From the sequence record MK308675.1: a stretch of 64,000 nt of DNA; one strand, written 5' to 3'. Positions 328 to 61,738 of the stretch are shown here, one piece after another. The position numbers and the translations under genes were made by a program. Each line of letters begins with the position of its first letter. The first letter of the stretch is position 1. The notes under the pieces were generated by a model, which saw nothing but the letters and a program-made list of their open reading frames with translations, had not been told where the DNA came from and did no database searches.

Positions 328-346
328 GTAATATAGGTGACAGATT
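328..346 (-). promoter_or_regulatory. putative early promoter for the gp68-like gene
   Basis: AATCTGTCACCTATATTAC contains the phiKZ-type TATTAC motif. Confidence 0.65.
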
Positions 347-10274: not shown

Positions 10275-12096
10275 CGTACCTTCAGCCAGTTCGTTAGACT
10301 GACCCGCAGCATGACCTGCTAAGCTCTAGGGTTTCCCACTAGACGACTCACCTTCGTGAGAAGGGCATTTGACTGCCGTCGAGACTATATCATCGGTTCC
10401 TCTCAAGGACACCGCCTCATGCTTCGCCCGCACTTGCTGGGCTAGCGCTAACTTATTCCGCTATTAGGATAGCATCTGTTAGCATTAGTCGTTGAACCTG
10501 CCACAGTTTAAAGTAGCTCGGCTGCTGATTACCAATTCCATGTTCCCTTAGGAGTGTCATCGCGACAGGTCCATAGGACATCTCTTATGTTCTTTCTGTT
10601 TTCACAGCCTTTCCATCTGAACTTTCGTTCTCTGTTTCGGCCATAAGAGCTTTACGGATTTCCAGCAATTCAAAAGGTTTTACTTCGACTTAGATTTCCA
10701 GCTTCTCAATCTTTTTATGTTAATGTTAAAGCGCCCAAGCAAAGGGACGTTTTTCTTTTCAGCGTTTCTTATTGTAGACTCAGCTATGCCTATTTGCTTA
10801 GCAACTTGCTGTATGGAAGTGCCTACGTAGATTTCTTTAGTTAAGGGGTCCTCTACAGTAACGATGGCCGAAATGCGACTAGCGTCCTTCAGGATAGCGC
10901 CTTCCGCTTCTGTAAAGTCTGGCCATTCAGGTTTGTCCAAAACGGGACGAACCACGTAGCCTCGGCACGGGACATCGTCGAAGGTACTCTTCATCCTGGA
11001 AACATTCGACTCCACTGTCCCTATGTATCTGGCAGCTGCTCCGGAACTTTCAAAGATTTTTACTTCTCCGAAACTTTCCGGGCGATAGCTTTTTACCATA
11101 CAGGACGCGCACATACCAGAGCGACCAACCTGTTTTTCTAGCTCCGACGCCACCGGTACCGGCAATCCGCTGTCTTCATAGGAAAAAGCATATGTGCCCT
11201 TTTCATTTAGCTGATAGACGGCTTCTTCTGCGGCTCTTCTAGAAAGGCGGTCCACGCTATTGAAGTGCATGCCTGTGGCTTTAGCGGCCACCGTAGAGGA
11301 ACTATATATTTCCTGAGTGTTTTCTCTAACGTCAAAAACACAAACTCTTCTACCCTTCCCTTTTCTTGAGATGTTCTTTTCTTTCCCGGCGTTCTTGCTC
11401 TGAGTAAGCCATTGAAGGTTACTGAGCCCATCATTAAAGCCATCAGTATCCTTATGGTCACACTCTAAAACATCCACGTTAGCCGGATAGTCTTTAAAAG
11501 CCAGTAGTTTCGCTCTGCCTCTCCCAAGTAACAGATGTCGCCCCAAGTCGTCTAAAATACTGGCCTTCATATAACGACCATGTATGCTAAATGAATGGGT
11601 CTTTCCGGTTGCTCCATTCAGCAATAGACCTTCTTTAGACAGTCCGTATTTCGTACAGCCTGGAATCCTAAAGTAATTTGGATTTTTTCTAAGCGGCAGG
11701 GGTTTGGTAAACCCATACGTTAGATTACCTGGATGTAGATTATTACGGTCACCGTCTATGAACAATGGGCGTATTTTTCTTACTTCTTCCAGAGAAAAAG
11801 CGAAGAGTTTCTTCCATGCCCAGACCATAACTTTAGCGATGGCCACTTCCACACGGCCATTATCGCTTTTTAAGAATACGCTTTTGTTTCTTCCATTGAC
11901 TTTGCGGACACATTTTGCTTCCGTTCCGTCACTAGAATAAACATTACCCTTTTTGTCTAGCCAGAGACCATAGTTTGGAATCTCGACTCGACTAACATTA
12001 ACATAACCACTTAAACGTTCTCTTTTCATAGCTTATCTCCTCTATGATATCCGTTTTTATGGTTTATTTTGATTTAAAAAACTTACCCTTCTTTTA
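10275..12096 (-). mobile_element. group I self-splicing intron (1822 nt) in nvRNAP beta' with a homing endonuclease ORF
   Basis: The 5' exon ends in U (TTCGAT), the intron starts TAA and ends in G. Core elements on the minus strand: P AATTGCTGGAAA (10659-10670), Q AATCAGCAG (10522-10530), R GTTCAACGACTA (10486-10497), S GATATAGTC (10383-10391). Confidence 0.93.
10680..12029 (-). CDS. intron-encoded HNH homing endonuclease with NUMOD4- and NUMOD1-like modules
   Basis: Intact motif CDHKDTDGFNDGLSNLQWLTQSKN; a degenerate first copy (FIDGDRNNLHPGNL); GAGGAG RBS inside the intron. Confidence 0.9.
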   Translation of the reverse strand: MKRERLSGYVNVSRVEIPNYGLWLDKKGNVYSSDGTEAKCVRKVNGRNKSVFLKSDNGRVEVAIAKVMVWAWKKLFAFSLEEVRKIRPLFIDGDRNNLHPGNLTYGFTKPLPLRKNPNYFRIPGCTKYGLSKEGLLLNGATGKTHSFSIHGRYMKASILDDLGRHLLLGRGRAKLLAFKDYPANVDVLECDHKDTDGFNDGLSNLQWLTQSKNAGKEKNISRKGKGRRVCVFDVRENTQEIYSSSTVAAKATGMHFNSVDRLSRRAAEEAVYQLNEKGTYAFSYEDSGLPVPVASELEKQVGRSGMCASCMVKSYRPESFGEVKIFESSGAAARYIGTVESNVSRMKSTFDDVPCRGYVVRPVLDKPEWPDFTEAEGAILKDASRISAIVTVEDPLTKEIYVGTSIQQVAKQIGIAESTIRNAEKKNVPLLGRFNINIKRLRSWKSKSK

Positions 12097-17692: not shown

Positions 17693-18886
17693 TTAACGCT
17701 TTATGACGGCGACCGGTTCTCTTTGCAATATAGAAGATACGTACTTAACATGTTCTTCTAACGTTGTTCCTTCCGGCATTATTCTGGTCTCCGTATAACC
17801 GACACCAAAGCTTTCTTTAGAAAGAGTAGGATACGGCATAGAATCTAGAACTAGTTTCTCTTCACTGGGGTCTTTTGTCGACCACACGTATGCTTTGTTT
17901 AGGCCGAGATGGCCCATTCGGCTTTTTAATGAGGATGTAAATCCCAACTTGAATGCACCCGCACCATCGATTGGCATCAGGTAGACGACAGCGATACCTT
18001 CGGCCTTACAGCATTCCGGGATTACCCGCAAATAGAGGTCTCTTCCGCTATAAGTGTTTTCACCATGACACGAACACGTTAACTTGACCGTTCCTTTATC
18101 TTTAACGAAGCTATAGGTGTGACCAGTAATGGCCGTCGATTGGGTCAGGCGAAACTTAAGGGCAGATTCTGTTATTTCTAGATGCAGTCCCCTATTCGCG
18201 TTACCGCACGTTTGACAACCAGTACCATGGTGGACTAGGTTACTGATTATCGGGTCCCATTCTCTACCGCAGGCCTTACACTTACAATGGATGGTATCCG
18301 TGTTCTTCTTGCCGTCTAGCGAAGAATGCTCGATGCCATCCTCTTTTAGTCTGGCCTTTAGGTCATCGTATTTACCGTCTTGGTAAAAGCGCTTCTCTGC
18401 CATCTTCTTGTAGCCACATTCAGGACAGCCTGTCTTGCGCATAACCGATTCAGCTTGAACCCACCACTCGTGCTTACATGTCTTACAGACGGCCCAACCG
18501 TGCTCCTTGAGACCTTTGTACTCGAACTTACTTAGGTCGATGTTAGGGTCTCGTTTCTTAGTCTCGGTAATGAACTGCTTTTCCGTAATCTTGCGGCTCT
18601 CGTTCTGGTTACGGTACTTACACTCCTTACAGCCTCGTCCCTGCATTAAGTTGCTAGGGCGAATTTCCCATTCGTAGCCACAGCCTTCTACACCGCAGTA
18701 AACTGTAGAGGCTACCTTGTCTCCGAGATACTCGAACTTGTCGAGCATAATAGTGGAGTCCGGATGTCGAGCTCGGAACTTCTCGACAAACTTCTCCGTT
18801 GACATTCTTGCCATTGTGTTTTCCTTATAAGGATAAAAGATTGTTAGAGACAGACTTTCGCCTGTCTCTAACGGTTGCATGCACAA
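17693..18886 (-). CDS. free-standing zinc-ribbon-repeat endonuclease with GIY-YIG/T5orf172-like C-terminus
   Basis: Repeated C-x2-C...W...G-C-x2-C units; C-terminal VVYLM...FKLGFTSSLKSRMGHL. Likely start MARMST. Confidence 0.7.
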   Translation of the reverse strand: MCMQPLETGESLSLTIFYPYKENTMARMSTEKFVEKFRARHPDSTIMLDKFEYLGDKVASTVYCGVEGCGYEWEIRPSNLMQGRGCKECKYRNQNESRKITEKQFITETKKRDPNIDLSKFEYKGLKEHGWAVCKTCKHEWWVQAESVMRKTGCPECGYKKMAEKRFYQDGKYDDLKARLKEDGIEHSSLDGKKNTDTIHCKCKACGREWDPIISNLVHHGTGCQTCGNANRGLHLEITESALKFRLTQSTAITGHTYSFVKDKGTVKLTCSCHGENTYSGRDLYLRVIPECCKAEGIAVVYLMPIDGAGAFKLGFTSSLKSRMGHLGLNKAYVWSTKDPSEEKLVLDSMPYPTLSKESFGVGYTETRIMPEGTTLEEHVKYVSSILQREPVAVIKR

Positions 18887-18910: not shown

Positions 18911-21139
18911 TTAAATGTCTACGGATAGAGTTGAATCCTCCAACCATCTGTCTGCTTCCTCCTCGGAAATGTCGTCACTGAAGAAATGAGTGAATTTAGT
19001 ATTTGCAATGTTCATGTAAATGCCGTTACATGCCAGATAGAAAGGCTGCATTAGAGACATTAGGATTTTGCGCTCATCCATTACGGCGATGATTTCTTTC
19101 GGTATCTTTCCGCCTTGAAGCTGGTCAACCGGAGCCAGTAACTGAGTCATGGCTTTCTTATCGCGACTATACATGAATTCTTTCAATTCACTCGTAACGT
19201 TCCCATCAAGCGATTCCGCCCACTCATTAAAGTCTTTCTCTTTGCCTAACGTCACGTTGACCTTTAATGCGTCCGCTGGAGTTTGTTCAACTCTACCGTA
19301 CTTAGACCCCAAGACGATATTCCATAAGTCTTTACAGACTATCTGAGTTGCTCTGTCTTCAGCGGCGTACGTTTGAGGAGTCTTAATCTGTTCCGTTTTA
19401 AAGTACGTCGCATCACCGTCTCTCAAACGACCAAGAATACGGTGTTCTAATTTGGCCAAATAGGCGGCAGGCTCCATGGGACTAATCCCGCCCTCAATCG
19501 ACGGAGCATTAAGAAGATACCAGTAGAACTTTTCTGTTTCTCTTCTCACTGGGCTCGGCAACTTGGAGCTCTTTAACTGCACTCCTTTCACTTCTAGTTC
19601 GGATTCAGGATATACATTCCCTTCACATGCCGATATATCCATGATGTAGTGTTTTGTGACCGTTGTATTAACCTGAGCCTTAGAGTAGAACTCTGACTTC
19701 ATAGAAAGTCGGAACAGTTGGTCTTTATGAACGCCCATCTGACCGGACATGAGAGCTAAGGTATGTACGATAAGCTGAGACGTTAGGTATGATGTGATTG
19801 CGCCTGCTTGTACAGCACGGTGAGAGAAATCAATCTTACCAGTAAACCACTTAACCTGACGTTGAGTAGAGAAGATAGATGAGTCGGTATCTGAACCCAC
19901 AACCACACGACGTTTGATTGTAGGTAGAGAATGGATTGACCCTGGCATAATCTTAGTTGAGATGAACGCATCGATAAATACTTGGTACTGGTCGAACGTT
20001 TCCACAACTTGTTTGATGTAGCCAGTCCAGATAGCATACTCGTCTGGAGTTAAGTCCTTCGCTTTCTTACCTGCCATGAAGTCCGCAGATAACAGAGACG
20101 CTAGTGCCACATCATCGTCTGACGCACCGCCTGCATATTTCTTTTGTTCTTCTGGGTCAGTAAGAGGAGTAGGGCGACGACAAAGGATATCGTACAGTTG
20201 ACGAATAGCTTTATCGTTCGTTTCATGAAGTGCGTTTAAATCACCAATGAAACTAAATGCTGCACGCTCAATAGGTGTCATGTTCTCTACCATTCTGTGA
20301 ATGAGAGTTTCAGCATGCTCATCTTTCCAATATAGGCGAGATGAACTTAGGATTTGTTCGTAGACATATTCAACCGATGGCGGAGTGATGTCGAACAACA
20401 TTACGGCTTCTTCTACCTTAACAAGGTCTGCCTGCGACGTCACATAAACCATGTTCTCCATCGTCACCTCTGGGCTGAAGTAATGACGGTTAGAAGCCAT
20501 GAATTTCTCGTTACATGCGTTAGCGTATGAAGTGATAGCACGACATACAGAAGTTAATGACGTGTGAGATGAAGCGTAGTAAAGTGGGTTGTATGGCGAA
20601 CTCAGTGCACCTGAGATAGAGTTGTTACGGATTTTAAAGTTAGCCTGTAACAGGTTACAGAACGTAGCATGTTCATGGTTACCATCCATGAAAGCTGACT
20701 GGCCTTCTTTCTTAACTGCTTTACGCATCGAAAGGTTATTTGAAATGAAGCCAGATAGGAATGAATCTTCTACGTCTGGGTTACAGTAAGCGATTAAGTT
20801 AGGCGCTAGGATATGGTTCTTAGCAATTACCCAATCTAGGTAAGAAAGTAAATCAACCTTACGCTTAGTACGGTCTCCGCGTGGGGCGCGCATGAGAGAG
20901 TGTAAGTCAGGTGATTTAGGACGCCAATCGGTTAGCATCTTTTCATCGACATAGCCTGTCGTCTTTTCTAGGTCGTCGCCTGTACCTAGGTGAAGTGCCA
21001 TAGACATGGACTTCTTATAATTACCAACGATATCGTAATCACGACCGTAGTAATCTAAATCTTTTACAAAAGCGGACATTGTAGTTCTCCTTTTATCTAA
21101 CAGATTGACCGAGCCTGTAAAAAAGAAAAAACACTCCAC
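18911..21139 (-). CDS. family B DNA polymerase, polymerase-domain subunit (phiKZ gp50-like)
   Basis: FKIRNNSISG (motif B), VGSDTDSSIF (motif C) and KHY. Likely start at 21079 (MSAFVK) with AGGAG RBS. Confidence 0.9.
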   Translation of the reverse strand: MECFFFFTGSVNLLDKRRTTMSAFVKDLDYYGRDYDIVGNYKKSMSMALHLGTGDDLEKTTGYVDEKMLTDWRPKSPDLHSLMRAPRGDRTKRKVDLLSYLDWVIAKNHILAPNLIAYCNPDVEDSFLSGFISNNLSMRKAVKKEGQSAFMDGNHEHATFCNLLQANFKIRNNSISGALSSPYNPLYYASSHTSLTSVCRAITSYANACNEKFMASNRHYFSPEVTMENMVYVTSQADLVKVEEAVMLFDITPPSVEYVYEQILSSSRLYWKDEHAETLIHRMVENMTPIERAAFSFIGDLNALHETNDKAIRQLYDILCRRPTPLTDPEEQKKYAGGASDDDVALASLLSADFMAGKKAKDLTPDEYAIWTGYIKQVVETFDQYQVFIDAFISTKIMPGSIHSLPTIKRRVVVGSDTDSSIFSTQRQVKWFTGKIDFSHRAVQAGAITSYLTSQLIVHTLALMSGQMGVHKDQLFRLSMKSEFYSKAQVNTTVTKHYIMDISACEGNVYPESELEVKGVQLKSSKLPSPVRRETEKFYWYLLNAPSIEGGISPMEPAAYLAKLEHRILGRLRDGDATYFKTEQIKTPQTYAAEDRATQIVCKDLWNIVLGSKYGRVEQTPADALKVNVTLGKEKDFNEWAESLDGNVTSELKEFMYSRDKKAMTQLLAPVDQLQGGKIPKEIIAVMDERKILMSLMQPFYLACNGIYMNIANTKFTHFFSDDISEEEADRWLEDSTLSVDI

Positions 21140-21159
21140 TGACCCGAAGGCCAGTGGAG
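21134..21159 (-). terminator. UUCG hairpin terminator upstream of the DNA polymerase RBS
   Basis: CTCCACTG/CAGTGGAG stem followed by TTTTTTCTTTTT. Confidence 0.7.
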
Positions 21160-21289: not shown

Positions 21290-21706
21290 TTAATTACGGA
21301 CGATAGCCATCGATGAGATTTCCCAACCACCTTGGTTAACCCATAGGCGGAACTTATCGTAGTCCCCTTCATCGAAGTTCTTTATCTGTACGTCTAGGCG
21401 GGTGTCACCTAAAGACTCGATAGTGTTATCGATAATCCAAGGCAGGCCAATGTAAACCATACTACCATCAGCTAGAGCCAACTGTACGTAGTCGTACGAA
21501 GCGTAGTCATCTAAGAAACGCGCTTTACGGTCTTCCGAAAGAGTTGGATAGATGTTGATATGGTTTGTATCAGCGTTAGAAGTCTGAGGTACAAACTGGC
21601 CACCGATGATAGCGGCAATCGTTCCTTCAAACTGTTTACGGCCACTGATAGAACCGTAGATAGTAAAGCGGTGTTGGCCGCCAGTTACTAAGTCATTGAT
21701 AGTCAT
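21290..21706 (-). CDS. conserved Chimalliviridae protein (gp49 position)
   Basis: 138 aa; NHINIYPTL...YIGLPWI motif; directly upstream of the DNA polymerase. Confidence 0.6.
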   Translation of the reverse strand: MTINDLVTGGQHRFTIYGSISGRKQFEGTIAAIIGGQFVPQTSNADTNHINIYPTLSEDRKARFLDDYASYDYVQLALADGSMVYIGLPWIIDNTIESLGDTRLDVQIKNFDEGDYDKFRLWVNQGGWEISSMAIVRN

Positions 21707-21733: not shown

Positions 21734-22093
21734 CTAGCGGTAAGTCACCGCTAGCTCATACGGACCACCTGCAAACTCAATGTTGCATGGGGCCAAATCT
21801 TTGTTCTGTAATTCGGGAACGGAATCTAAACTTTCGTAGAGCGAAGAATACAGCTCTCTAAAAGATAACAGAACGTCTTTACTTAAATGTCGATTGAAGA
21901 CATCGCACGTATATCCATAAGGCGCTAGATGGGCGAACATCTCTTCTGCTTTCTCATGGTACGCCATTAGGGCTTCGATGTCGTCATCGATTGGAGCATC
22001 CATAAAGGAAGAGGCTTTAGCAACCTCCATGGCAAACTTATGCACCAGAGGAGTACGCACCATCACCACTACTGCTCGTATAGGACTGAACAT
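21734..22093 (-). CDS. small hypothetical protein, paralogue-array member
   Basis: N-terminal VVVMVR strand; C-terminal hairpin ...YELAVTYR. Confidence 0.55.
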   Translation of the reverse strand: MFSPIRAVVVMVRTPLVHKFAMEVAKASSFMDAPIDDDIEALMAYHEKAEEMFAHLAPYGYTCDVFNRHLSKDVLLSFRELYSSLYESLDSVPELQNKDLAPCNIEFAGGPYELAVTYR

Positions 22094-22532
22094 GTTGTTC
22101 CTCCGGTTGCACTAGAATTGAATCAGGGTCTATTACAATTACGCTAAAGTCTGAAAAAGAACAAGCCTCAGTCGAGTTTAGTAGAACGTTGCGTAAGTCT
22201 GAGTTGATGTTAAAAAGACGAACCATAGCTTCTATAAAGCCGCAGGCCATCGCATCTATCTGGATAGAATCCTCGCAGTCTCTACAGCCTGAGATTCTAC
22301 CACCACAATGACAATGGTCTATGAGTAATCCCTCGCAGGTATCTTCATAGAGTTGGTCTTTGATATCGCTAACGTCTGTTATGTCTTGCATCAGACATTT
22401 CAAAATGGGCTTAAGCATAATATCGAACCCGGGAGGGTAGCGATTAACTACCTCCCGAATTCCCGCAGTGCGCATTATTACAAAAGCCGGTTCGTTAACG
22501 TACTGGACGTTGAACATGGGCGGCACCCTCAT
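22038..22532 (-). CDS. paralogue-array member with Cys/His cluster
   Basis: FVIMR N-strand; HCHCGGRISGCRDC; C-motif FSVIVIDPDSILV. Confidence 0.6.
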   Translation of the reverse strand: MRVPPMFNVQYVNEPAFVIMRTAGIREVVNRYPPGFDIMLKPILKCLMQDITDVSDIKDQLYEDTCEGLLIDHCHCGGRISGCRDCEDSIQIDAMACGFIEAMVRLFNINSDLRNVLLNSTEACSFSDFSVIVIDPDSILVQPEEQHVQSYTSSSGDGAYSSGA

Positions 22533-22860
22533 TGTAAGTAACCAAGAAAATTAAATCGCGAGCAGCAAGCTCTTCCCGATATACTACCTGCCAATCGTTT
22601 CCGTAAGGGAAGCTTTCCGCAATCTCAGATACAATGTTCCAGCGCAATTCATCTAAATGAGTGAGAGACTTACCTGAAGGTAGGAGTATCTCGTTCATCG
22701 TGAACTGGTTACCGTTATGTTTGTATCCAAAGGCTAATGCATTGCGGATTATCTCTTCTCGGTCCGATTCAGCAGAACTATCCATGATGACTTCGCGCAT
22801 TAACTTATCCACGAACTGATGTCCGCGAACAATTACAGTGTGCACAACATTACTCATCAA
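22495..22860 (-). CDS. paralogue-array member
   Basis: TVIVR N-strand; C-terminal DLIFLVTYN. Confidence 0.55.
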   Translation of the reverse strand: MMSNVVHTVIVRGHQFVDKLMREVIMDSSAESDREEIIRNALAFGYKHNGNQFTMNEILLPSGKSLTHLDELRWNIVSEIAESFPYGNDWQVVYREELAARDLIFLVTYNEGAAHVQRPVR

Positions 22861-23246
22861 TCTATCCCCGATACAGTTATCAATAACGTGTGGTCATCCA
22901 GAGAAGTTGCAAAGTAGAAGATACCTGTCATGAGACAGAGCTTATTCTCCACTTCGGTCAACTTCGCTTTCAGCTCAGCCAAATGTCTTTCATCTAATTC
23001 AGACATTAAATACGTTATATCTTCCGAGAACTTCTCGTACTCGTCATCCGTACCATGGAAGGCTTTGAGCACATCATCGAATGCATCGTCAGGGTCCATG
23101 CCCATAATGCGGTGGCGTACCCACAGGCCAAACGCATGTCTGGCCTCATGGGTGGCCTCAGGCAATATCGTTCCCGCTAGTCTATGTCGGATAAGGATAT
23201 TGTAATCACTCATAATAAAGCACCATACTATCGTTATCGATAACAT
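22857..23246 (-). CDS. paralogue-array member
   Basis: NILIR N-strand; C-motif YFATSLDDHTLLI. Confidence 0.6.
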   Translation of the reverse strand: MLSITIVWCFIMSDYNILIRHRLAGTILPEATHEARHAFGLWVRHRIMGMDPDDAFDDVLKAFHGTDDEYEKFSEDITYLMSELDERHLAELKAKLTEVENKLCLMTGIFYFATSLDDHTLLITVSGID

Positions 23247-23592
23247 CTACTTTAAATTCGCAGTTACCATCCCCAGTAAAACGCTCCGTTAAAAGGCCGC
23301 GTTCCGATTCAGACTTAGGCAGTTGGTTGAAGACCGTGTTTAGAATCTCTTCTTTTATTTCCGTGAAGTACTGCTGCCAACCTTTAGAACCATCGTTAAA
23401 GGCTGGAGCATATTCTTCTAGGTCCGACGAGATTGTTTCACGGTCCACGCCCCACATGTGCATTTCAATTGCTGCCAGAGTCATTTCTCTCAGTTCATCT
23501 TGCGCCGACAAGATATGGGCGTTGGCCTGAGGAAACCGGACTATTACTTTGTCTTGCATTAGGGCCTCCTGATTGGTAACGAGAGAAGACAT
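23206..23592 (-). CDS. paralogue-array member
   Basis: KVIVR N-strand; C-motif FKVDVIDNDSMVL. Confidence 0.6.
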   Translation of the reverse strand: MSSLVTNQEALMQDKVIVRFPQANAHILSAQDELREMTLAAIEMHMWGVDRETISSDLEEYAPAFNDGSKGWQQYFTEIKEEILNTVFNQLPKSESERGLLTERFTGDGNCEFKVDVIDNDSMVLYYE

Positions 23593-24085
23593 TAGTTACA
23601 GGGCGAAGTCTAGGCGTAGGACGAACATCCATGATGCCCTGAGACGTATACGGCATGTTAGCGGCATAAACCACAACGGTTTCGCCATCAATGATAGCTG
23701 TGCCGAAGTGGTCAGTATTCATAACGACATTACACGCTTCAGGGTCATAGCGGAAGCCATCTAGCATATGAACCATCAAGTTTAAGAACTCGTCTTCCAG
23801 AGCTTCATTCTCTTGACAGCCGCCGCAAACGTTCTGCTGATTGTAACAAGTGCATGGTTGTTTTTCCAGACACAATAGTGTGTCCTGCTCAATCATCCAA
23901 AGTTCTAGGTTAGCACAAAGGACGTTATAAGCGTAGTTAAGGTCGATAGTTTGACCAGAAGCTAACGTGGCTTCTTTAAGTTTGGCATAAGCGAGATGAT
24001 AGAACTCTCTGACTGCAAGCGCAGTCAGAGAAGGGTTTGCTCTTGCGAAATCGCTTATCCCAGTATGACGTACTAGGATTTGCAT
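23495..24085 (-). CDS. paralogue-array member with Cys cluster
   Basis: QILVR N-strand; CTC...CGGC; C-motif FGTAIIDGETVVV. Confidence 0.6.
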   Translation of the reverse strand: MQILVRHTGISDFARANPSLTALAVREFYHLAYAKLKEATLASGQTIDLNYAYNVLCANLELWMIEQDTLLCLEKQPCTCYNQQNVCGGCQENEALEDEFLNLMVHMLDGFRYDPEACNVVMNTDHFGTAIIDGETVVVYAANMPYTSQGIMDVRPTPRLRPVTNVFSRYQSGGPNARQSNSPVSSGQRPYLVGAR

Positions 24086-24495
24086 TACAGTATGTCTCCA
24101 AAGTTTAACGCAGGCGCCTCTTCTTGAACTGCCTGCTCTAGTCTATGTAGATAGAACGAGTTCATGTCGATACGCTCGCATTGAAAGTGGTAATACTCTC
24201 GGTCGTGTTCACTAGTGTGCGCATCGACAAGCTGTTGGACTCTTGTTCTTACAGCACCAAATATCGCATTCACGGTATTCGTAGGCACGAAGTTAGTTTC
24301 AAAGTATTCCTGTAAATCGGTCTTTACAAATGCTTGAAACTGAGGTCCCCAAAAGAACCACTGGAATTCACTCCAGGCCATTTCGTTAAAGTCTAAGTGC
24401 GGAGCATAGAACCCATACATCTCGAACTGGTATTCTATCTCAGCGGCGACTTTATCGAAACTAATTAATTCTGGGCTTCGCATTGTATACTCCAT
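24085..24495 (-). CDS. paralogue-array member
   Basis: C-motif FQCERIDMNSFYL. Confidence 0.6.
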   Translation of the reverse strand: MEYTMRSPELISFDKVAAEIEYQFEMYGFYAPHLDFNEMAWSEFQWFFWGPQFQAFVKTDLQEYFETNFVPTNTVNAIFGAVRTRVQQLVDAHTSEHDREYYHFQCERIDMNSFYLHRLEQAVQEEAPALNFGDIL

Positions 24496-24964
24496 CTACG
24501 AAATGTTCTTGTTCCCATTGCAGGATACGGAAGTCACCAATATAGTCAACGAAGAGTTCTCCAGCTTCAGAGAATCGAGGCGACCAGATATCGAATGAGT
24601 GTGTACCTAATAGCTGCGTGAGTTGATTATGTAAGGTTAGTCCTGAATTTTCCATATAGAAACGACGAAGGTCTTCCATTTGCTTCTTATCGAAAAACCC
24701 GATGGCTTTCATAATGTACGCATCTAAGGGATTGAGTTGTTCTTCGAAAACGAACTCATGGGGTTCGCGACAGAAGTCCAGCATGCTTAGGTTTAGGACA
24801 TGTCGTGCGTGTGCTTCCACCATACCTCTGAAGAACTCAAAGGAATGCGGCGTATGGAATGGCCAAGGCTGGCTTTCCAGTTTGTTGTATTCAACTACGT
24901 TTACGAGGCGGTACACATATAGGTTACCGTCCAACACATAGCCTTTTAAATGCTCGTCTTGCAT
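24461..24964 (-). CDS. conserved hypothetical protein within the array
   Basis: 167 aa; GDFRILQWE motif; overlaps both neighbours. Confidence 0.6.
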   Translation of the reverse strand: MQDEHLKGYVLDGNLYVYRLVNVVEYNKLESQPWPFHTPHSFEFFRGMVEAHARHVLNLSMLDFCREPHEFVFEEQLNPLDAYIMKAIGFFDKKQMEDLRRFYMENSGLTLHNQLTQLLGTHSFDIWSPRFSEAGELFVDYIGDFRILQWEQEHFVDGVYNAKPRIN

Positions 24965-25326
24965 CTGCGTCGTACTCCTTCCTCGTAGACTATAAAGCTC
25001 AGGTCGTCTATCATTTCTACTTGGAACGTGACTTGCCAGAGGTTTATCGGTTGTAGGGCCTCAGATATCTCATCCATTAAGAAAGGACGCCACTTATCTA
25101 AGAACCGCAATAAGCCTTCTGAGTCAATTGGGTTTACGGGACTGAACTTAGCTCCCCACTTTCGTTGCAATATTAAACCGACTATGGTCTCAACAGTTGC
25201 ATCTCTAAGTCTTTTAGTTTCTTCTCGAGGGATTCTCTCAAAAAGAAAAGTCTCGACATCGTAAGCCACCAAACCTAGTTTAGAAACTAAGTCTGGGGCA
25301 AGCTGTCCTATATAACAAATGTCCAT
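24946..25326 (-). CDS. first gene of the paralogue array
   Basis: C-motif FQVEMIDDLSFIV; lies ~40 nt downstream of the early promoter motif. Confidence 0.6.
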   Translation of the reverse strand: MDICYIGQLAPDLVSKLGLVAYDVETFLFERIPREETKRLRDATVETIVGLILQRKWGAKFSPVNPIDSEGLLRFLDKWRPFLMDEISEALQPINLWQVTFQVEMIDDLSFIVYEEGVRRRCKTSI

Positions 25327-25364
25327 AGCTGGAAACCTTTTTATTTATGATGATAACTATGGGA

Positions 25365-25375
25365 GTAATATAGGT
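25365..25375 (-). promoter_or_regulatory. putative early promoter for the paralogue array
   Basis: ACCTATATTAC. Confidence 0.65.
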
Positions 25376-25514
25376 ATAAAAATATCTAGAAATCAGGCTA
25401 AATCCAATAGGGTGACGAAGCCTTTATTTATAAGGGTCTTCAAAATCCTATTTTCGCTCAGGCCTTTATTCTATTGGATTCAGGCTGCATGTTAAAGAAT
25501 ACAAAGGGACCGCT

Positions 25515-26297
25515 ATGAACAATCTCATTGATTTCTGTATTAAAGGTCATATCCGTAATCGTATTCCGCAAGTGATACTACAGCGTGCCTTTAAACCAGA
25601 CCCTCTGTTCGGACGCCACAATGTTCAGAACCTAGACTGGCTTATTGAGCAAGACGTGCTTATGAACAAGGTTCTACCCGACCTCAATACCATAGGCGGT
25701 GAGCAAATCACCATTGAGTTAACTGAGTTAAATCCTGTCCCTGTTGAAGGGGCATACATCTATGAAATCCCATTGTCTAAGACACAAGGCCGTAATATAA
25801 GCCGAGTGATGTCAGTAGACTATTCCATGGGCCGTCGTGGCGTAACAGACTCACGTGACCCTCTAATGGGAGCTGCTCGTAAGATGTTAATGGCATCTAC
25901 ACCTTATGAGTCCACAGGCAATGCTCAGGTTCGTTTAGTCGGACCTAACACTATTGCCGTTCATGAGACTCTATCGGGCGTAGCTCACTTACGTTGTGTC
26001 TTAGGCTATGACGACGAACTCTCCACAGTAGACCAGTCTTACTGGCTAGACTACGCTAACCTGGCTGTCGTAGCAGCAGAGATGATTATCTATAATCGCA
26101 TCTCTATTGAGTTGGGTTCCGGTTCTAGTACAGGTGGTTCTCCGAACGACCGTCTAGTGCAACGTGTAGAAGAAATGTCAGACGCATGGGAACGATATCA
26201 GGAACTGCTTGATTCGACCATGGGTAAACTCTCTGTCCTTTCTAGCTACGATGCGAACTTAGAACACTTGCAGTTACAATTAGGTCCGCTGCCTTAA
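25515..26297 (+). CDS. conserved Chimalliviridae protein (phiKZ gp42-like)
   Basis: 260 aa, isolated plus-strand gene; VRLVGPNTIAV and LRCVLGYDDELS motifs. Confidence 0.55.
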   Translation: MNNLIDFCIKGHIRNRIPQVILQRAFKPDPLFGRHNVQNLDWLIEQDVLMNKVLPDLNTIGGEQITIELTELNPVPVEGAYIYEIPLSKTQGRNISRVMSVDYSMGRRGVTDSRDPLMGAARKMLMASTPYESTGNAQVRLVGPNTIAVHETLSGVAHLRCVLGYDDELSTVDQSYWLDYANLAVVAAEMIIYNRISIELGSGSSTGGSPNDRLVQRVEEMSDAWERYQELLDSTMGKLSVLSSYDANLEHLQLQLGPLP

Positions 26298-26316: not shown

Positions 26317-26346
26317 CCTAGGACTCCCGAATAGAGGAGTCCTAGG
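26317..26346. terminator. bidirectional terminator
   Basis: CCTAGGACTCC/GGAGTCCTAGG stem. Confidence 0.7.
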
Positions 26347-40309: not shown

Positions 40310-40321
40310 GTAATATAGGTT
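40310..40321 (-). promoter_or_regulatory. putative early promoter
   Basis: AACCTATATTAC. Confidence 0.65.
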
Positions 40322-43706: not shown

Positions 43707-43719
43707 GTAATATAGGTTT
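43707..43719 (-). promoter_or_regulatory. putative early promoter
   Basis: AAACCTATATTAC. Confidence 0.65.
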
Positions 43720-61704: not shown

Positions 61705-61738
61705 TGTCCTTAATGATAGAAAGTTAATTACACGAGGG

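What the first reader, a model, noticed from the sequence alone, without database searches (positions are those of the whole stretch)
21734..25326. Tandem array of about 9 highly diverged small paralogues under one early promoter
Seen: nine overlapping ORFs of 120-200 aa. Six share a C-terminal motif F/Y-x4-(I/L)D-x2-(S/T)-hhh (FQVEMIDDLSFIV, FQCERIDMNSFYL, FGTAIIDGETVVV, FKVDVIDNDSMVL, YFATSLDDHTLLI, FSVIVIDPDSILV), five start with a strand ending in R (ILVR, VIVR, ILIR, VIMR, VIVR), and two carry Cys clusters. Established: the syntenic phiKZ region includes gp48, reported as import factor Imp2 (recalled). Inference: one fold amplified into a translationally coupled set, either a hetero-oligomeric ring or a panel of cargo adaptors or anti-defence proteins.
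Basis: partly seen in the sequence, partly recalled or inferred. Interest (0 to 1): 0.7.

Follow-up and report, generated by a model that had tools for sequence, protein, structure and literature searches.

The report
Conserved jumbo-phage operon of small look-alike proteins
Nine small overlapping genes of a nucleus-forming Vibrio jumbo phage form a conserved early operon of very old, fast-diverging look-alike proteins, at the spot where phage phiKZ encodes two cargo-specific nuclear-import factors; what they do here is still unknown.

Summary
The window is Vibrio phage vB_VmeM-Yong XC31, a chimallin-encoding jumbo phage. Nine overlapping minus-strand ORFs (117-196 aa) plus an SH3DP gene lie between a promoter-like 10-mer and a terminator-like hairpin.

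This is not a recent amplification. The nearest relatives (DNA polymerase 65% and 41% identical) carry the same nine positions one-to-one. More than 100 chimallivirus loci have a 4-11 gene array at the same place, which in phiKZ is gp43-gp48.

Paralogy is shown only in part:
- O4/O8 is solid: hhalign 87-89%, Foldseek probability 1.0, and a shared CxC..CxxC knuckle.
- O2/O3 is probable (66-90%).
- O1/O7 is weak.
- O5/O6 rest on the motif.
- O9 has no link.

AlphaFold models of O2 (pLDDT 80) and O8 (pLDDT 76) share one plan: N-terminal strand, helical bundle, C-terminal hairpin. In O8 the motif is that hairpin. Nothing in the PDB matches.

Both lie in the syntenic array, but no Yong protein shows sequence similarity to them. 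An import-adaptor role is therefore an inference from position alone.

The parts
25365..25374 (-). Promoter-like 10-mer CCTATATTAC, 38 nt upstream of the O1 start codon, preceded by a T-rich stretch
   Evidence: The same 10-mer sits 38-46 nt before the first ATG of minus-strand operons at 328, 40310 and 43707. The octamer also lies 20 nt before the O1 orthologue in L011 and upstream of phiKZ gp54, for which PMC8244752 reports an early promoter. Early timing in Yong is inferred.
24946..25326 (-). O1, 126 aa; C-terminal motif FQVEMIDDLSFIV; weak paralogue of O7
   Evidence: Orthologue in L011 with z 35 and 42% identity. O1-O7: blastp E 8e-5 over 47 aa; hhalign 28-53%.
24461..24964 (-). O2, 167 aa; member of the phiKZ gp43-like family found in most chimallivirus loci sampled
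   Evidence: The iterative HMM family has 102 sequences and includes phiKZ gp43. There are 73 representatives with E below 1e-3 among 1.84 billion proteins. AlphaFold model: pLDDT 80.1, pTM 0.68, strand 8-12, four helices, hairpin 125-131/136-144. Foldseek hits in BFVD are mostly chimallivirus proteins. No PDB match.
24085..24483 (-). O3, 132 aa (alternative start at 24495); motif FQCERIDMNSFYL; probable paralogue of O2
   Evidence: The family grows to 81 sequences. hhalign of the O3 family against the O2 family, with no shared sequences, gives 66-90% probability, E 6e-5 to 2e-6, over 108-109 columns; the reversed decoy gives 0.6%. GGAG lies before ATG 24483.
23495..24085 (-). O4, 196 aa; N-terminal ILVR, CxC..CxxC knuckle, motif FGTAIIDGETVVV; its tail overlaps O5 by 65 nt
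   Evidence: Paralogue of O8: hhalign 87-89%. The Foldseek search with the O8 model hits a 196-aa entry of the Yong accession series with probability 1.0 and TM 0.54/0.46. That this entry is O4 is inferred from its length.
23206..23559 (-). O5, 117 aa from ATG 23559; N-terminal VIVR; motif FKVDVIDNDSMVL
   Evidence: GGAGG lies 6 nt before 23559. The GenBank start at 23484 removes the N-terminal strand, which the L011 orthologue keeps. O5-O8 hhalign 14-25%.
22857..23213 (-). O6, 118 aa; N-terminal ILIR; motif YFATSLDDHTLLI
   Evidence: Orthologue in L011 with z 24. It is linked to the other members only by the motif and by a weak hhalign score with O5 (score 21).
22495..22857 (-). O7, 120 aa; N-terminal VIVR; no strict motif, but a hairpin-like C-terminal end
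   Evidence: Positional orthologue in L011 with z 5.5 and 24% identity. Weak link to O1.
22038..22517 (-). O8, 159 aa (164 aa from ATG 22532); VIMR strand, CxC..CxxC knuckle, motif FSVIVIDPDSILV; not annotated in GenBank
   Evidence: No CDS in MK308674. Orthologues: L011 z 45, BONAISHI ORF66 E 3e-11. AlphaFold model: pLDDT 76, pTM 0.70; strand 13-16 is VIMR, the knuckle loop is 66-78, and the hairpin 124-130/133-138 is FSVIVID-PD-SILVQP.
21734..22093 (-). O9, 119 aa; N-terminal VVVMVR; at the position of phiKZ gp48 (Imp4); no detectable relative among the other eight
   Evidence: GGAGG lies before the ATG. Positional orthologue in L011 with z 6.7. All hhalign scores against the other positions are at decoy level. 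Against phiKZ gp48: phmmer E 0.11 in a small database and hhalign 0.2%.
21290..21706 (-). O10, 138 aa, SH3DP domain protein (phiKZ gp49 equivalent); last gene of the unit
   Evidence: Pfam PF20287 SH3DP, E 4.7e-30. 90 phage records carry it, always just upstream of the DNA polymerase in the loci fetched.
21134..21159 (-). Terminator-like hairpin (11 pairs, 7 G-C, T-run) between O10 and the DNA polymerase gene
   Evidence: Function not tested.
25515..26297 (+). Divergently transcribed neighbour (phrog_3179, phiKZ gp42 position); upstream boundary of the array. No PhuZ gene lies between it and O1
   Evidence: Synteny tables.
18911..21079 (-). DNA polymerase (phiKZ gp50 equivalent); downstream boundary and the anchor used to fetch related loci
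   Evidence: phrog_2927, E 4e-183. Alignment A2.

Best explanation
The nine ORFs are the Yong XC31 version of an operon that nearly all chimallin-encoding jumbo phages carry between the gp42-like gene (with or without PhuZ) and the SH3DP and DNA-polymerase genes. In phiKZ this block is gp43-gp48.

The unit appears to be transcribed from one promoter of the type that marks early operons in these phages. The genes overlap, so their translation is probably coupled. It ends at a hairpin before the polymerase gene.

The products are small soluble proteins built on one plan: an N-terminal beta-strand, a helical bundle of about 80-100 residues, and a C-terminal beta-hairpin.

The set most likely arose by very old tandem duplications. 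The pairs O4/O8, O2/O3 and perhaps O1/O7 are still visible. Each copy then became a separate, retained, fast-evolving gene.

My best guess at the function comes from position alone. The last two genes of the phiKZ array are Imp2 and Imp4, the cargo-specific adaptors of Imp1-dependent import into the phage nucleus. By analogy, each Yong member would bind a different partner or cargo through its variable helical surface, while the conserved strands hold the fold together or provide a common docking edge.

Shown here: the gene set, the motif, the synteny, the one-to-one orthology, three paralogous pairs, and two models.
Inferred: early timing, a single origin of all nine, that the three strands form one sheet, and the whole functional reading.
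For: - Identity and synteny.
- Chimallin, RNA polymerase beta and DNA polymerase lie next door.
- One-to-one orthology of the nine positions in L011 and BONAISHI: diagonal z of 5.5-45, mean z of 2.4-30 over three genomes, 24-44% identity against 65% for the polymerase.
- 104 loci have 4-11 ORFs (mode 6) from the gp43-like gene up to SH3DP.
- Motif: 6 hits in the array against 0 elsewhere.
- Paralogy:
  - O4/O8: hhalign 87-89%, full-length alignment A8, Foldseek probability 1.0.
  - O2/O3: 66-90% over 109 columns, decoy 0.6%.
  - O1/O7: 28-53%.
  - hhalign scores among positions 1 and 3-8 exceed the reversed decoys and the SH3DP control.
- Tandem paralogy is demonstrable in the same array of other phages: a 178-member superfamily has 2-4 copies per locus in 59 of 81 loci.
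- Both models show a strand, helices and a hairpin. In O8 the motif maps onto the hairpin.
- Promoter and terminator. Background: PMC7598289 and PMC8244752.
- phiKZ orf47 is Imp2 and orf48 is Imp4, described as cargo-specific adaptors (10.1101/2024.03.27.586873; 10.64898/2026.09.21.753271). Neither tolerates disruptive transposon insertions (PMC12676376).
Against: - No Yong position shows sequence or profile similarity to phiKZ gp44-gp48 (2.3% or less). The functional transfer therefore rests on gene order alone.
- The O4/O8 profile does not match the O2 or O3 family profiles (0.1-0.4%).
- The Foldseek hit lists of the two models overlap only among low-probability hits.
- O9 has no link to any other member, and O6 is linked only by the motif.
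- Pairwise similarity between positions is at decoy level except for O4/O8.
- A strand, a helical bundle and a hairpin make a simple plan that could arise more than once.
- I could not superpose the two models, and I have no coordinates to show that the three strands form one sheet.
- The operon also contains SH3DP and abuts the polymerase, which fits a replication-linked role equally well.
Confidence: 0.45

Rival explanations
1. The array is a conserved operon of several unrelated small early proteins. There would be two or three small families (O2/O3, O4/O8, perhaps O1/O7) plus singletons. On this view the shared terminal strands and the D-x-x-S/T hairpin turn are a simple, convergent way to close a small helical domain, not the trace of one ancestral gene.
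For: - The O4/O8 profile gives 0.1-0.4% against the O2 and O3 profiles.
- O9 and O2 score at decoy level against the rest in 3-sequence profiles.
- Pairwise z-scores between positions are at decoy level except for O4/O8.
- The Foldseek lists of the two models barely overlap.
- The helix counts differ: 4 in O2 against 6 in O8.
Against: - The motif occurs 6 times in the array and not once in 14 times more protein elsewhere in the window, always at the same C-terminal place.
- hhalign scores among positions 1 and 3-8 lie above the decoys, with colinear C-terminal alignments.
- The order of secondary-structure elements is the same in both models.
- Tandem paralogy is proven in the equivalent array of other chimalliviruses.
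Confidence: 0.25
2. The proteins are accessory subunits or assembly factors of the replication machinery, or form a hetero-oligomeric complex. They would be co-expressed in fixed stoichiometry with the SH3DP protein and the DNA polymerase, and would not act as separate import adaptors.
For: - The array is in one unit with SH3DP, a domain family named for its association with phage DNA polymerases (Pfam PF20287).
- It lies directly upstream of the polymerase in every locus fetched.
- Overlapping genes suit stoichiometric co-production.
- Strict one-to-one retention of every position suits subunits of one complex.
Against: - A terminator-like hairpin separates the unit from the polymerase gene.
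- The number of array genes varies from 4 to 11 among loci, which is unusual for a fixed complex.
- The two phiKZ members with a known phenotype act in import of single cargos.
- No complex prediction could be run here.
Confidence: 0.15
3. The array is a panel of early host-takeover or anti-defence proteins, each aimed at a different host factor. The fast sequence divergence would reflect an arms race with the host.
For: - Probable early expression.
- Small size and no known domains.
- Orthologues are only 24-44% identical where the polymerase is 65% identical.
- The number of genes varies among phages.
Against: - The array sits in a core, syntenic block beside chimallin, the polymerase and RNA polymerase, not in a variable region.
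- Every position is retained one-to-one across phages of different Vibrio hosts.
- The gp43-like member is found in most loci sampled.
- PADLOC was not searched, and Pfam and PHROGs gave nothing.
Confidence: 0.12

Closest known systems
phiKZ Imp2 (gp47/orf47) and Imp4 (gp48/orf48), cargo-specific adaptors of Imp1-dependent import into the phage nucleus
   Same: They occupy the same place in the same conserved block: the last two small genes before the SH3DP gene (gp49) and the DNA polymerase (gp50), downstream of the divergent gp42-like gene. They are of similar size (178 and 127 aa, against 159 and 119 aa for O8 and O9). They have no known domains. By sequence they are restricted to close relatives.
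   Different: There is no detectable sequence or profile similarity to any Yong protein. phiKZ gp44-gp48 do not carry the motif family detectably. The only structural hint is a Foldseek hit of the O8 model to a 178-aa protein of phage SL2, with probability 0.30 and TM 0.27; I could not verify what that protein is. Function in Yong is untested.
phiKZ gp43 family (PhiPA3 gp039, Goslar, Noxifer, Psa21 homologues), uncharacterised
   Same: O2 belongs to it by iterative HMM search and by Foldseek (probability 0.94-1.0). It occupies the same position near the head of the array.
   Different: The Pseudomonas and E. coli phage members are 300-430 aa. O2 and most environmental members are about 150-170 aa and correspond to one domain of the long forms. 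No function is known for any member.
Tandem small-protein superfamily in the same array of other chimalliviruses (RP12-like and many metagenomic loci; defined here)
   Same: It has the same genomic slot, the same size range, and 2-4 adjacent copies per genome. It shows that duplication within this array is a family-wide habit.
   Different: The Yong proteins do not score significantly against its profile. The best is O7 at 18%.
SH3DP domain proteins (Pfam PF20287)
   Same: O10 is a clear member, and it closes the operon.
   Different: O10 is not one of the nine. It served as the negative control in the profile comparisons.

Membership tests
phiKZ Imp2 (gp47) family | Detectable homology to phiKZ gp47 | tested here: not met
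   hhalign of each Yong position against a 6-sequence gp47 alignment gives 2.3% or less. phmmer with gp47 finds only 5 phiKZ-like relatives in the pool.
phiKZ Imp2 (gp47) family | Second gene upstream of the SH3DP gene in the gp43-gp49 block | tested here: met
   O8 holds this position.
phiKZ Imp2 (gp47) family | Required for import of a specific cargo (Nlp1), and itself imported through Imp1 | not testable with these tools
   Genetic and microscopy phenotype from 10.1101/2024.03.27.586873.
phiKZ Imp4 (gp48) family | Detectable homology to phiKZ gp48 | tested here: not met
   O9 against gp48: phmmer E 0.11 in a database of about 80 sequences. hhalign 0.2%.
phiKZ Imp4 (gp48) family | Gene directly upstream of the SH3DP gene | tested here: met
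   O9 ends 27 nt before O10. gp48 precedes gp49.
phiKZ gp43-like family (applies to O2) | Matches the family profile, and the family is present across chimalliviruses | tested here: met
   The iterative HMM from O2 gathers 102 sequences including phiKZ gp43, Ea35-70 gp208 and RP12 ORF012. There are 73 representatives with E below 1e-3. Foldseek hits include PhiPA3 gp039, Noxifer and Goslar.
One paralogous family comprising all nine ORFs | Shared sequence motif at an equivalent position | tested here: inconclusive
   The strict motif is in 6 of 9 (O1, O3, O4, O5, O6, O8). O2, O7 and O9 have only hairpin-like C-terminal ends.
One paralogous family comprising all nine ORFs | Significant profile-profile similarity linking all members | tested here: not met
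   Only O4/O8 (87-89%), O2/O3 (66-90%) and O1/O7 (28-53%) are linked. O4/O8 against O2 or O3 gives 0.1-0.4%. O9 has no link.
One paralogous family comprising all nine ORFs | Same three-dimensional fold | tested here: inconclusive
   Two members were modelled (O2 pLDDT 80, O8 pLDDT 76). Both run strand, helices, hairpin. O8 against O4: Foldseek probability 1.0, TM 0.54. No superposition of O2 on O8 was possible, and seven members were not modelled.
SH3DP (PF20287), applies to O10 | Pfam gathering threshold | tested here: met
   104.2 bits against a cut-off of 25.

The most novel reading that the evidence does not exclude
The cargo-specific import adaptors known from phiKZ (Imp2, Imp4) would not be a Pseudomonas-phage peculiarity. 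They would be the local, unrecognisably diverged members of a universal Chimalliviridae 'adaptor array'. This would be a tandem set of small proteins of one fold, early-expressed from a fixed slot beside the polymerase and chimallin genes. Its copy number (4-11) and fast-evolving helical surfaces would set which proteins each phage admits to its nucleus.
Probability: 0.2. Interest if true: 0.75.

Novelty: new variant of a known kind. Interest (0 to 1): 0.5.

Why it matters
How a protein shell without known pores picks which proteins enter the phage nucleus is an open question. Outside the core factor Imp1/PicA, the only known specificity factors (Imp2, Imp4, Imp5, Imp7) are reported as confined to Pseudomonas phages.

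The Imp2/Imp4 locus turns out to be a positionally conserved array of small proteins across the loci sampled. At least some of these proteins are old tandem paralogues with a fold absent from the PDB. This gives a concrete, family-wide candidate set for the specificity layer, and a reason why sequence searches missed it. If the functional reading is wrong, the result is still useful annotation:
- a widespread gp43-like family with a confident model;
- a zinc-knuckle pair (O4/O8);
- one missed gene and one mis-started gene in the GenBank record.

Tried and rejected
- Pfam and PHROGs on all nine gave nothing above threshold.
- The search for homologous proteins with O5 and O3 found only the query itself. 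With a 106-sequence O2+O3 alignment it found 7 proteins. The word index is too coarse for these proteins.
- The search for related loci with O10, and with an SH3DP alignment, found nothing or had no usable pattern. The DNA-polymerase alignment worked.
Orthologues were then registered through the listing of cluster members.
- The first hhalign of A4 against A7 (96.8%) is not valid, because four sequences were in both alignments. The clean value is 66-90%.
- PDB by fold and by sequence gave no relative.
- Iterative HMM searches from O1, O5, O6, O7 and O9 never left their own orthologues.
- None of the nine scores significantly against the tandem superfamily of other chimalliviruses.
- Literature look-ups for phiKZ gp43-gp46 and for the core-genome blocks gave nothing specific. 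The Nature version of the Imp paper is not held.
- The sigma-70 promoter scan is at chance level (12 found, 14 expected), so it was not used.
- A context look-up for an O2-family representative returned only a 1.1-kb contig.

Full report
**Identity and setting.** The window matches Vibrio phage vB_VmeM-Yong XC31 (MK308674.1) at 100% identity; window position equals record position minus 62000. [quoted passage not shown] This is therefore a nucleus-forming jumbo phage.

**The observation.** One search confirms nine consecutive minus-strand ORFs, which I call O1 to O9 in the order of transcription. They are followed by O10 (21290-21706), a clear SH3DP domain protein (Pfam E 4.7e-30).
- All eight internal junctions overlap by 1-65 nt.
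- Shine-Dalgarno sequences support the starts 24483 (O3), 23559 (O5), 22517 (O8), 22093 (O9) and 21706 (O10).
It does not occur in the 17,825 residues of the other 69 putative genes of the window. Shuffled array proteins give a mean of 0.009 hits.
- The N-terminal ILVR, VIVR, ILIR and VIMR strings and the two Cys clusters are present.

**Transcription unit.** On the minus strand, 38 nt before the O1 start codon, lies CCTATATTAC, preceded by a T-rich stretch.
- All five exact copies of the octamer in the window are on the minus strand. The four that also carry the CC prefix (328, 25365, 40310, 43707) each lie 38-46 nt before the first ATG of an operon.
- The octamer also lies 20 nt before the O1 orthologue in the nearest relative.
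- In phiKZ it lies upstream of gp54, a gene for which dRNA-seq reports the early promoter motif (PMC8244752).
- Each RNA-polymerase-encoding jumbo phage is reported to have its own AT-rich motif of about 10 nt at -10 of early operons (PMC7598289).
- A strong terminator-like hairpin (21134-21159) separates O10 from the polymerase gene.

One promoter, ten genes and one terminator is thus the simplest reading. Early timing is inferred.

**Synteny.** In BONAISHI, pir03, sm033, RP12, LPKP23, Ea35-70 and phiKZ the order is the same: divergent gp42-like gene, often PhuZ, a run of small genes, SH3DP, DNA polymerase, then chimallin and RNA polymerase beta.
- In phiKZ the run is gp43, 44, 44.1, 45, 46, 47 and 48.
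- The preprint 10.1101/2024.03.27.586873 shows that orf47 is Imp2 (needed for Nlp1 import) and orf48 is Imp4 (needed for TopA import).
- Later work calls Imp2, Imp4 and Imp5 cargo-specific adaptors (10.64898/2026.09.21.753271).
- imp2 and imp4 lack disruptive transposon insertions (PMC12676376).

**Not a recent amplification.** Using a polymerase alignment I fetched 160 related loci.
- The nearest relatives (L011, L012, L091; polymerase 65% identical) have PhuZ, then exactly nine small ORFs, then SH3DP.
- A Smith-Waterman z-score matrix is strictly diagonal: 35, 40, 31, 10.5, 29, 24, 5.5, 45 and 6.7.
- With BONAISHI added (polymerase 41% identical), the diagonal means are 2.4-30, while off-diagonal values sit at decoy level except O4/O8 at 3.3.
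- Orthologues are only 24-44% identical.
- Across 104 loci, the stretch from the gp43-like gene to SH3DP holds 4-11 ORFs, with a mode of 6; Yong has 8.

**Paralogy by sequence.**
- O4 and O8 are paralogues. An iterative HMM search from O4 recruits O8 and both BONAISHI counterparts. hhalign gives 87-89%. The seven-sequence alignment A8 is colinear from the N-terminal strand, through a conserved PCxC-x(5-8)-CxxC knuckle, to the C-terminal motif.
- O2 belongs to a family of 102 sequences in the pool that includes phiKZ gp43. It has 73 representatives among 1.84 billion proteins.
- O3 heads a family of 81 sequences that begins to merge with the O2 family. With no shared sequences, hhalign gives 66-90% over 108-109 columns, against 0.6% for a reversed decoy. 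My first figure of 96.8% was inflated by four shared sequences and should be ignored.
- O1/O7 reach 28-53%, and O5/O8 reach 14-25%.
- With three-sequence profiles, scores among positions 1 and 3-8 lie above the reversed decoys and the SH3DP control. O2 and O9 do not.
- The O4/O8 profile does not match the O2 or O3 profiles (0.1-0.4%). The short alignment hhalign does report against O3 places motif on motif.
- In other chimalliviruses a 178-member superfamily occupies the same slot, with 2-4 copies in 59 of 81 loci. Duplication within this array is thus a family habit. The Yong proteins do not score significantly against it.

**Structure.** Only two prediction jobs were allowed.
- O2, with 76 sequences: pLDDT 80.1, pTM 0.68. 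The elements are strand 8-12, helices 13-26, 38-56, 79-88 and 93-119, strands 125-131 and 136-144, and helix 145-154.
- O8, with 7 sequences: pLDDT 76.0, pTM 0.70. The elements are strand 13-16 (VIMR), several helices, the knuckle loop at 66-78, a long helix 79-101, helix 106-117, then strands 124-130 and 133-138, which read FSVIVID-PD-SILVQP.
- Both models therefore show an N-terminal strand, a helical bundle and a C-terminal hairpin. I have no coordinates, so I could not superpose them or confirm that the strands form one sheet.
- Foldseek with O2 against BFVD returns, among its confident hits, only chimallivirus proteins. These include the long gp43-like proteins and several proteins of 114-165 aa, for example a 127-aa Ea35-70 protein at probability 0.98.
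- Foldseek with O8 returns three entries at probability 1.0. I assign each by length and accession series, so these assignments are not verified:
  - a 196-aa entry, taken to be Yong O4 (TM 0.54/0.46);
  - a 152-aa entry, taken to be BONAISHI ORF62 (TM 0.56/0.58);
  - a 137-aa entry, taken to be a pir03 array protein.
- The two hit lists share only low-probability entries.
- The PDB has no match to O2 by fold (best E 0.5). It has no match to either family by sequence.

**Link to Imp2 and Imp4.** No Yong position resembles phiKZ gp44-gp48 at profile level (2.3% or less). The O9-gp48 phmmer hit (E 0.11 in a database of about 80 sequences) is not evidence. The link is positional only.

**Verdict.** The array is a conserved, probably early operon of old, fast-evolving small proteins with a common architecture. 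Three paralogous pairs can be shown or suspected. A single origin of all nine and an import-adaptor function remain hypotheses.

1. I fetched phiKZ by an accession number from memory before any tool had shown it. Tools displayed the accession only afterwards.
2. The pattern I then searched for is present in the window, and its link with phiKZ was checked with tools.

Noticed in passing
window 22038-22532 (-); window 23484 vs 23559; L002:6028-6534: O8 has no CDS in GenBank MK308674, and its L011 orthologue is on record only as a truncated 107-aa call. Yet O8 is the best-conserved array member. The GenBank start of O5 (23484) removes the N-terminal strand, while GGAGG precedes ATG 23559. The BONAISHI O3 orthologue is also unannotated.
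   Followed up: yes
window 25327-25514: Yong has no PhuZ tubulin gene between the gp42-like gene and O1. L011/L012/L091, BONAISHI, LPKP23 and Ea35-70 all have one there. A tblastn search with the L011 PhuZ finds BONAISHI (31% identity) as the best phage hit, with no Yong record above it. Yong is therefore probably one of the PhuZ-less chimalliviruses.
   Followed up: partly
window 328-337, 25365-25374, 40310-40319, 43707-43716 (all -); near-copy at 61738: CCTATATTAC recurs 38-46 nt before the first ATG of minus-strand operons. It is a candidate early (virion RNA polymerase) promoter core for this phage. The same octamer lies upstream of phiKZ gp54 and of the L011 array.
   Followed up: partly
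window 17693-18886 (-) and 10680-12029 (-): HNH/homing-endonuclease-like ORFs sit next to the DNA polymerase gene and next to the RNA polymerase beta subunit gene.
   Followed up: no
alignment A4 (O3 family) and proteins P0012-P0079 (O2 family): Many O3-family proteins end in a conserved tail, GD[YW]xPE[RH]hR, which is degenerate in Yong O3 (it ends ...NFGDIL). O2-family proteins end in GxDYRhhDWERRMxSGEW. These look like short docking peptides appended to the domain.
   Followed up: no
L011:3860-4558: The O4 orthologue of the nearest relative carries two CxC..CxxC knuckles instead of one (232 aa against 196 aa).
   Followed up: no
L080:5153-5578 and L080:5559-6014: phiKZ gp48 (Imp4) hits two adjacent ORFs of one metagenomic chimallivirus at E about 0.003 each. 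This hints that Imp4-like genes are themselves tandemly duplicated elsewhere.
   Followed up: no
window 23495-23559 and 22038-22093: The C-terminal tails of O4 and O8 overlap the next gene by 65 and 56 nt. The O8 tail is low-complexity and is modelled with pLDDT below 52. These are unusually long overlaps for a phage operon.
   Followed up: partly
window 21134-21159 (-) and 26317-26346 (-): Two strong terminator-like hairpins (11-12 pairs followed by a T-run) bracket the region. One lies between SH3DP and the DNA polymerase gene. The other lies upstream, beyond the divergent gene.
   Followed up: no
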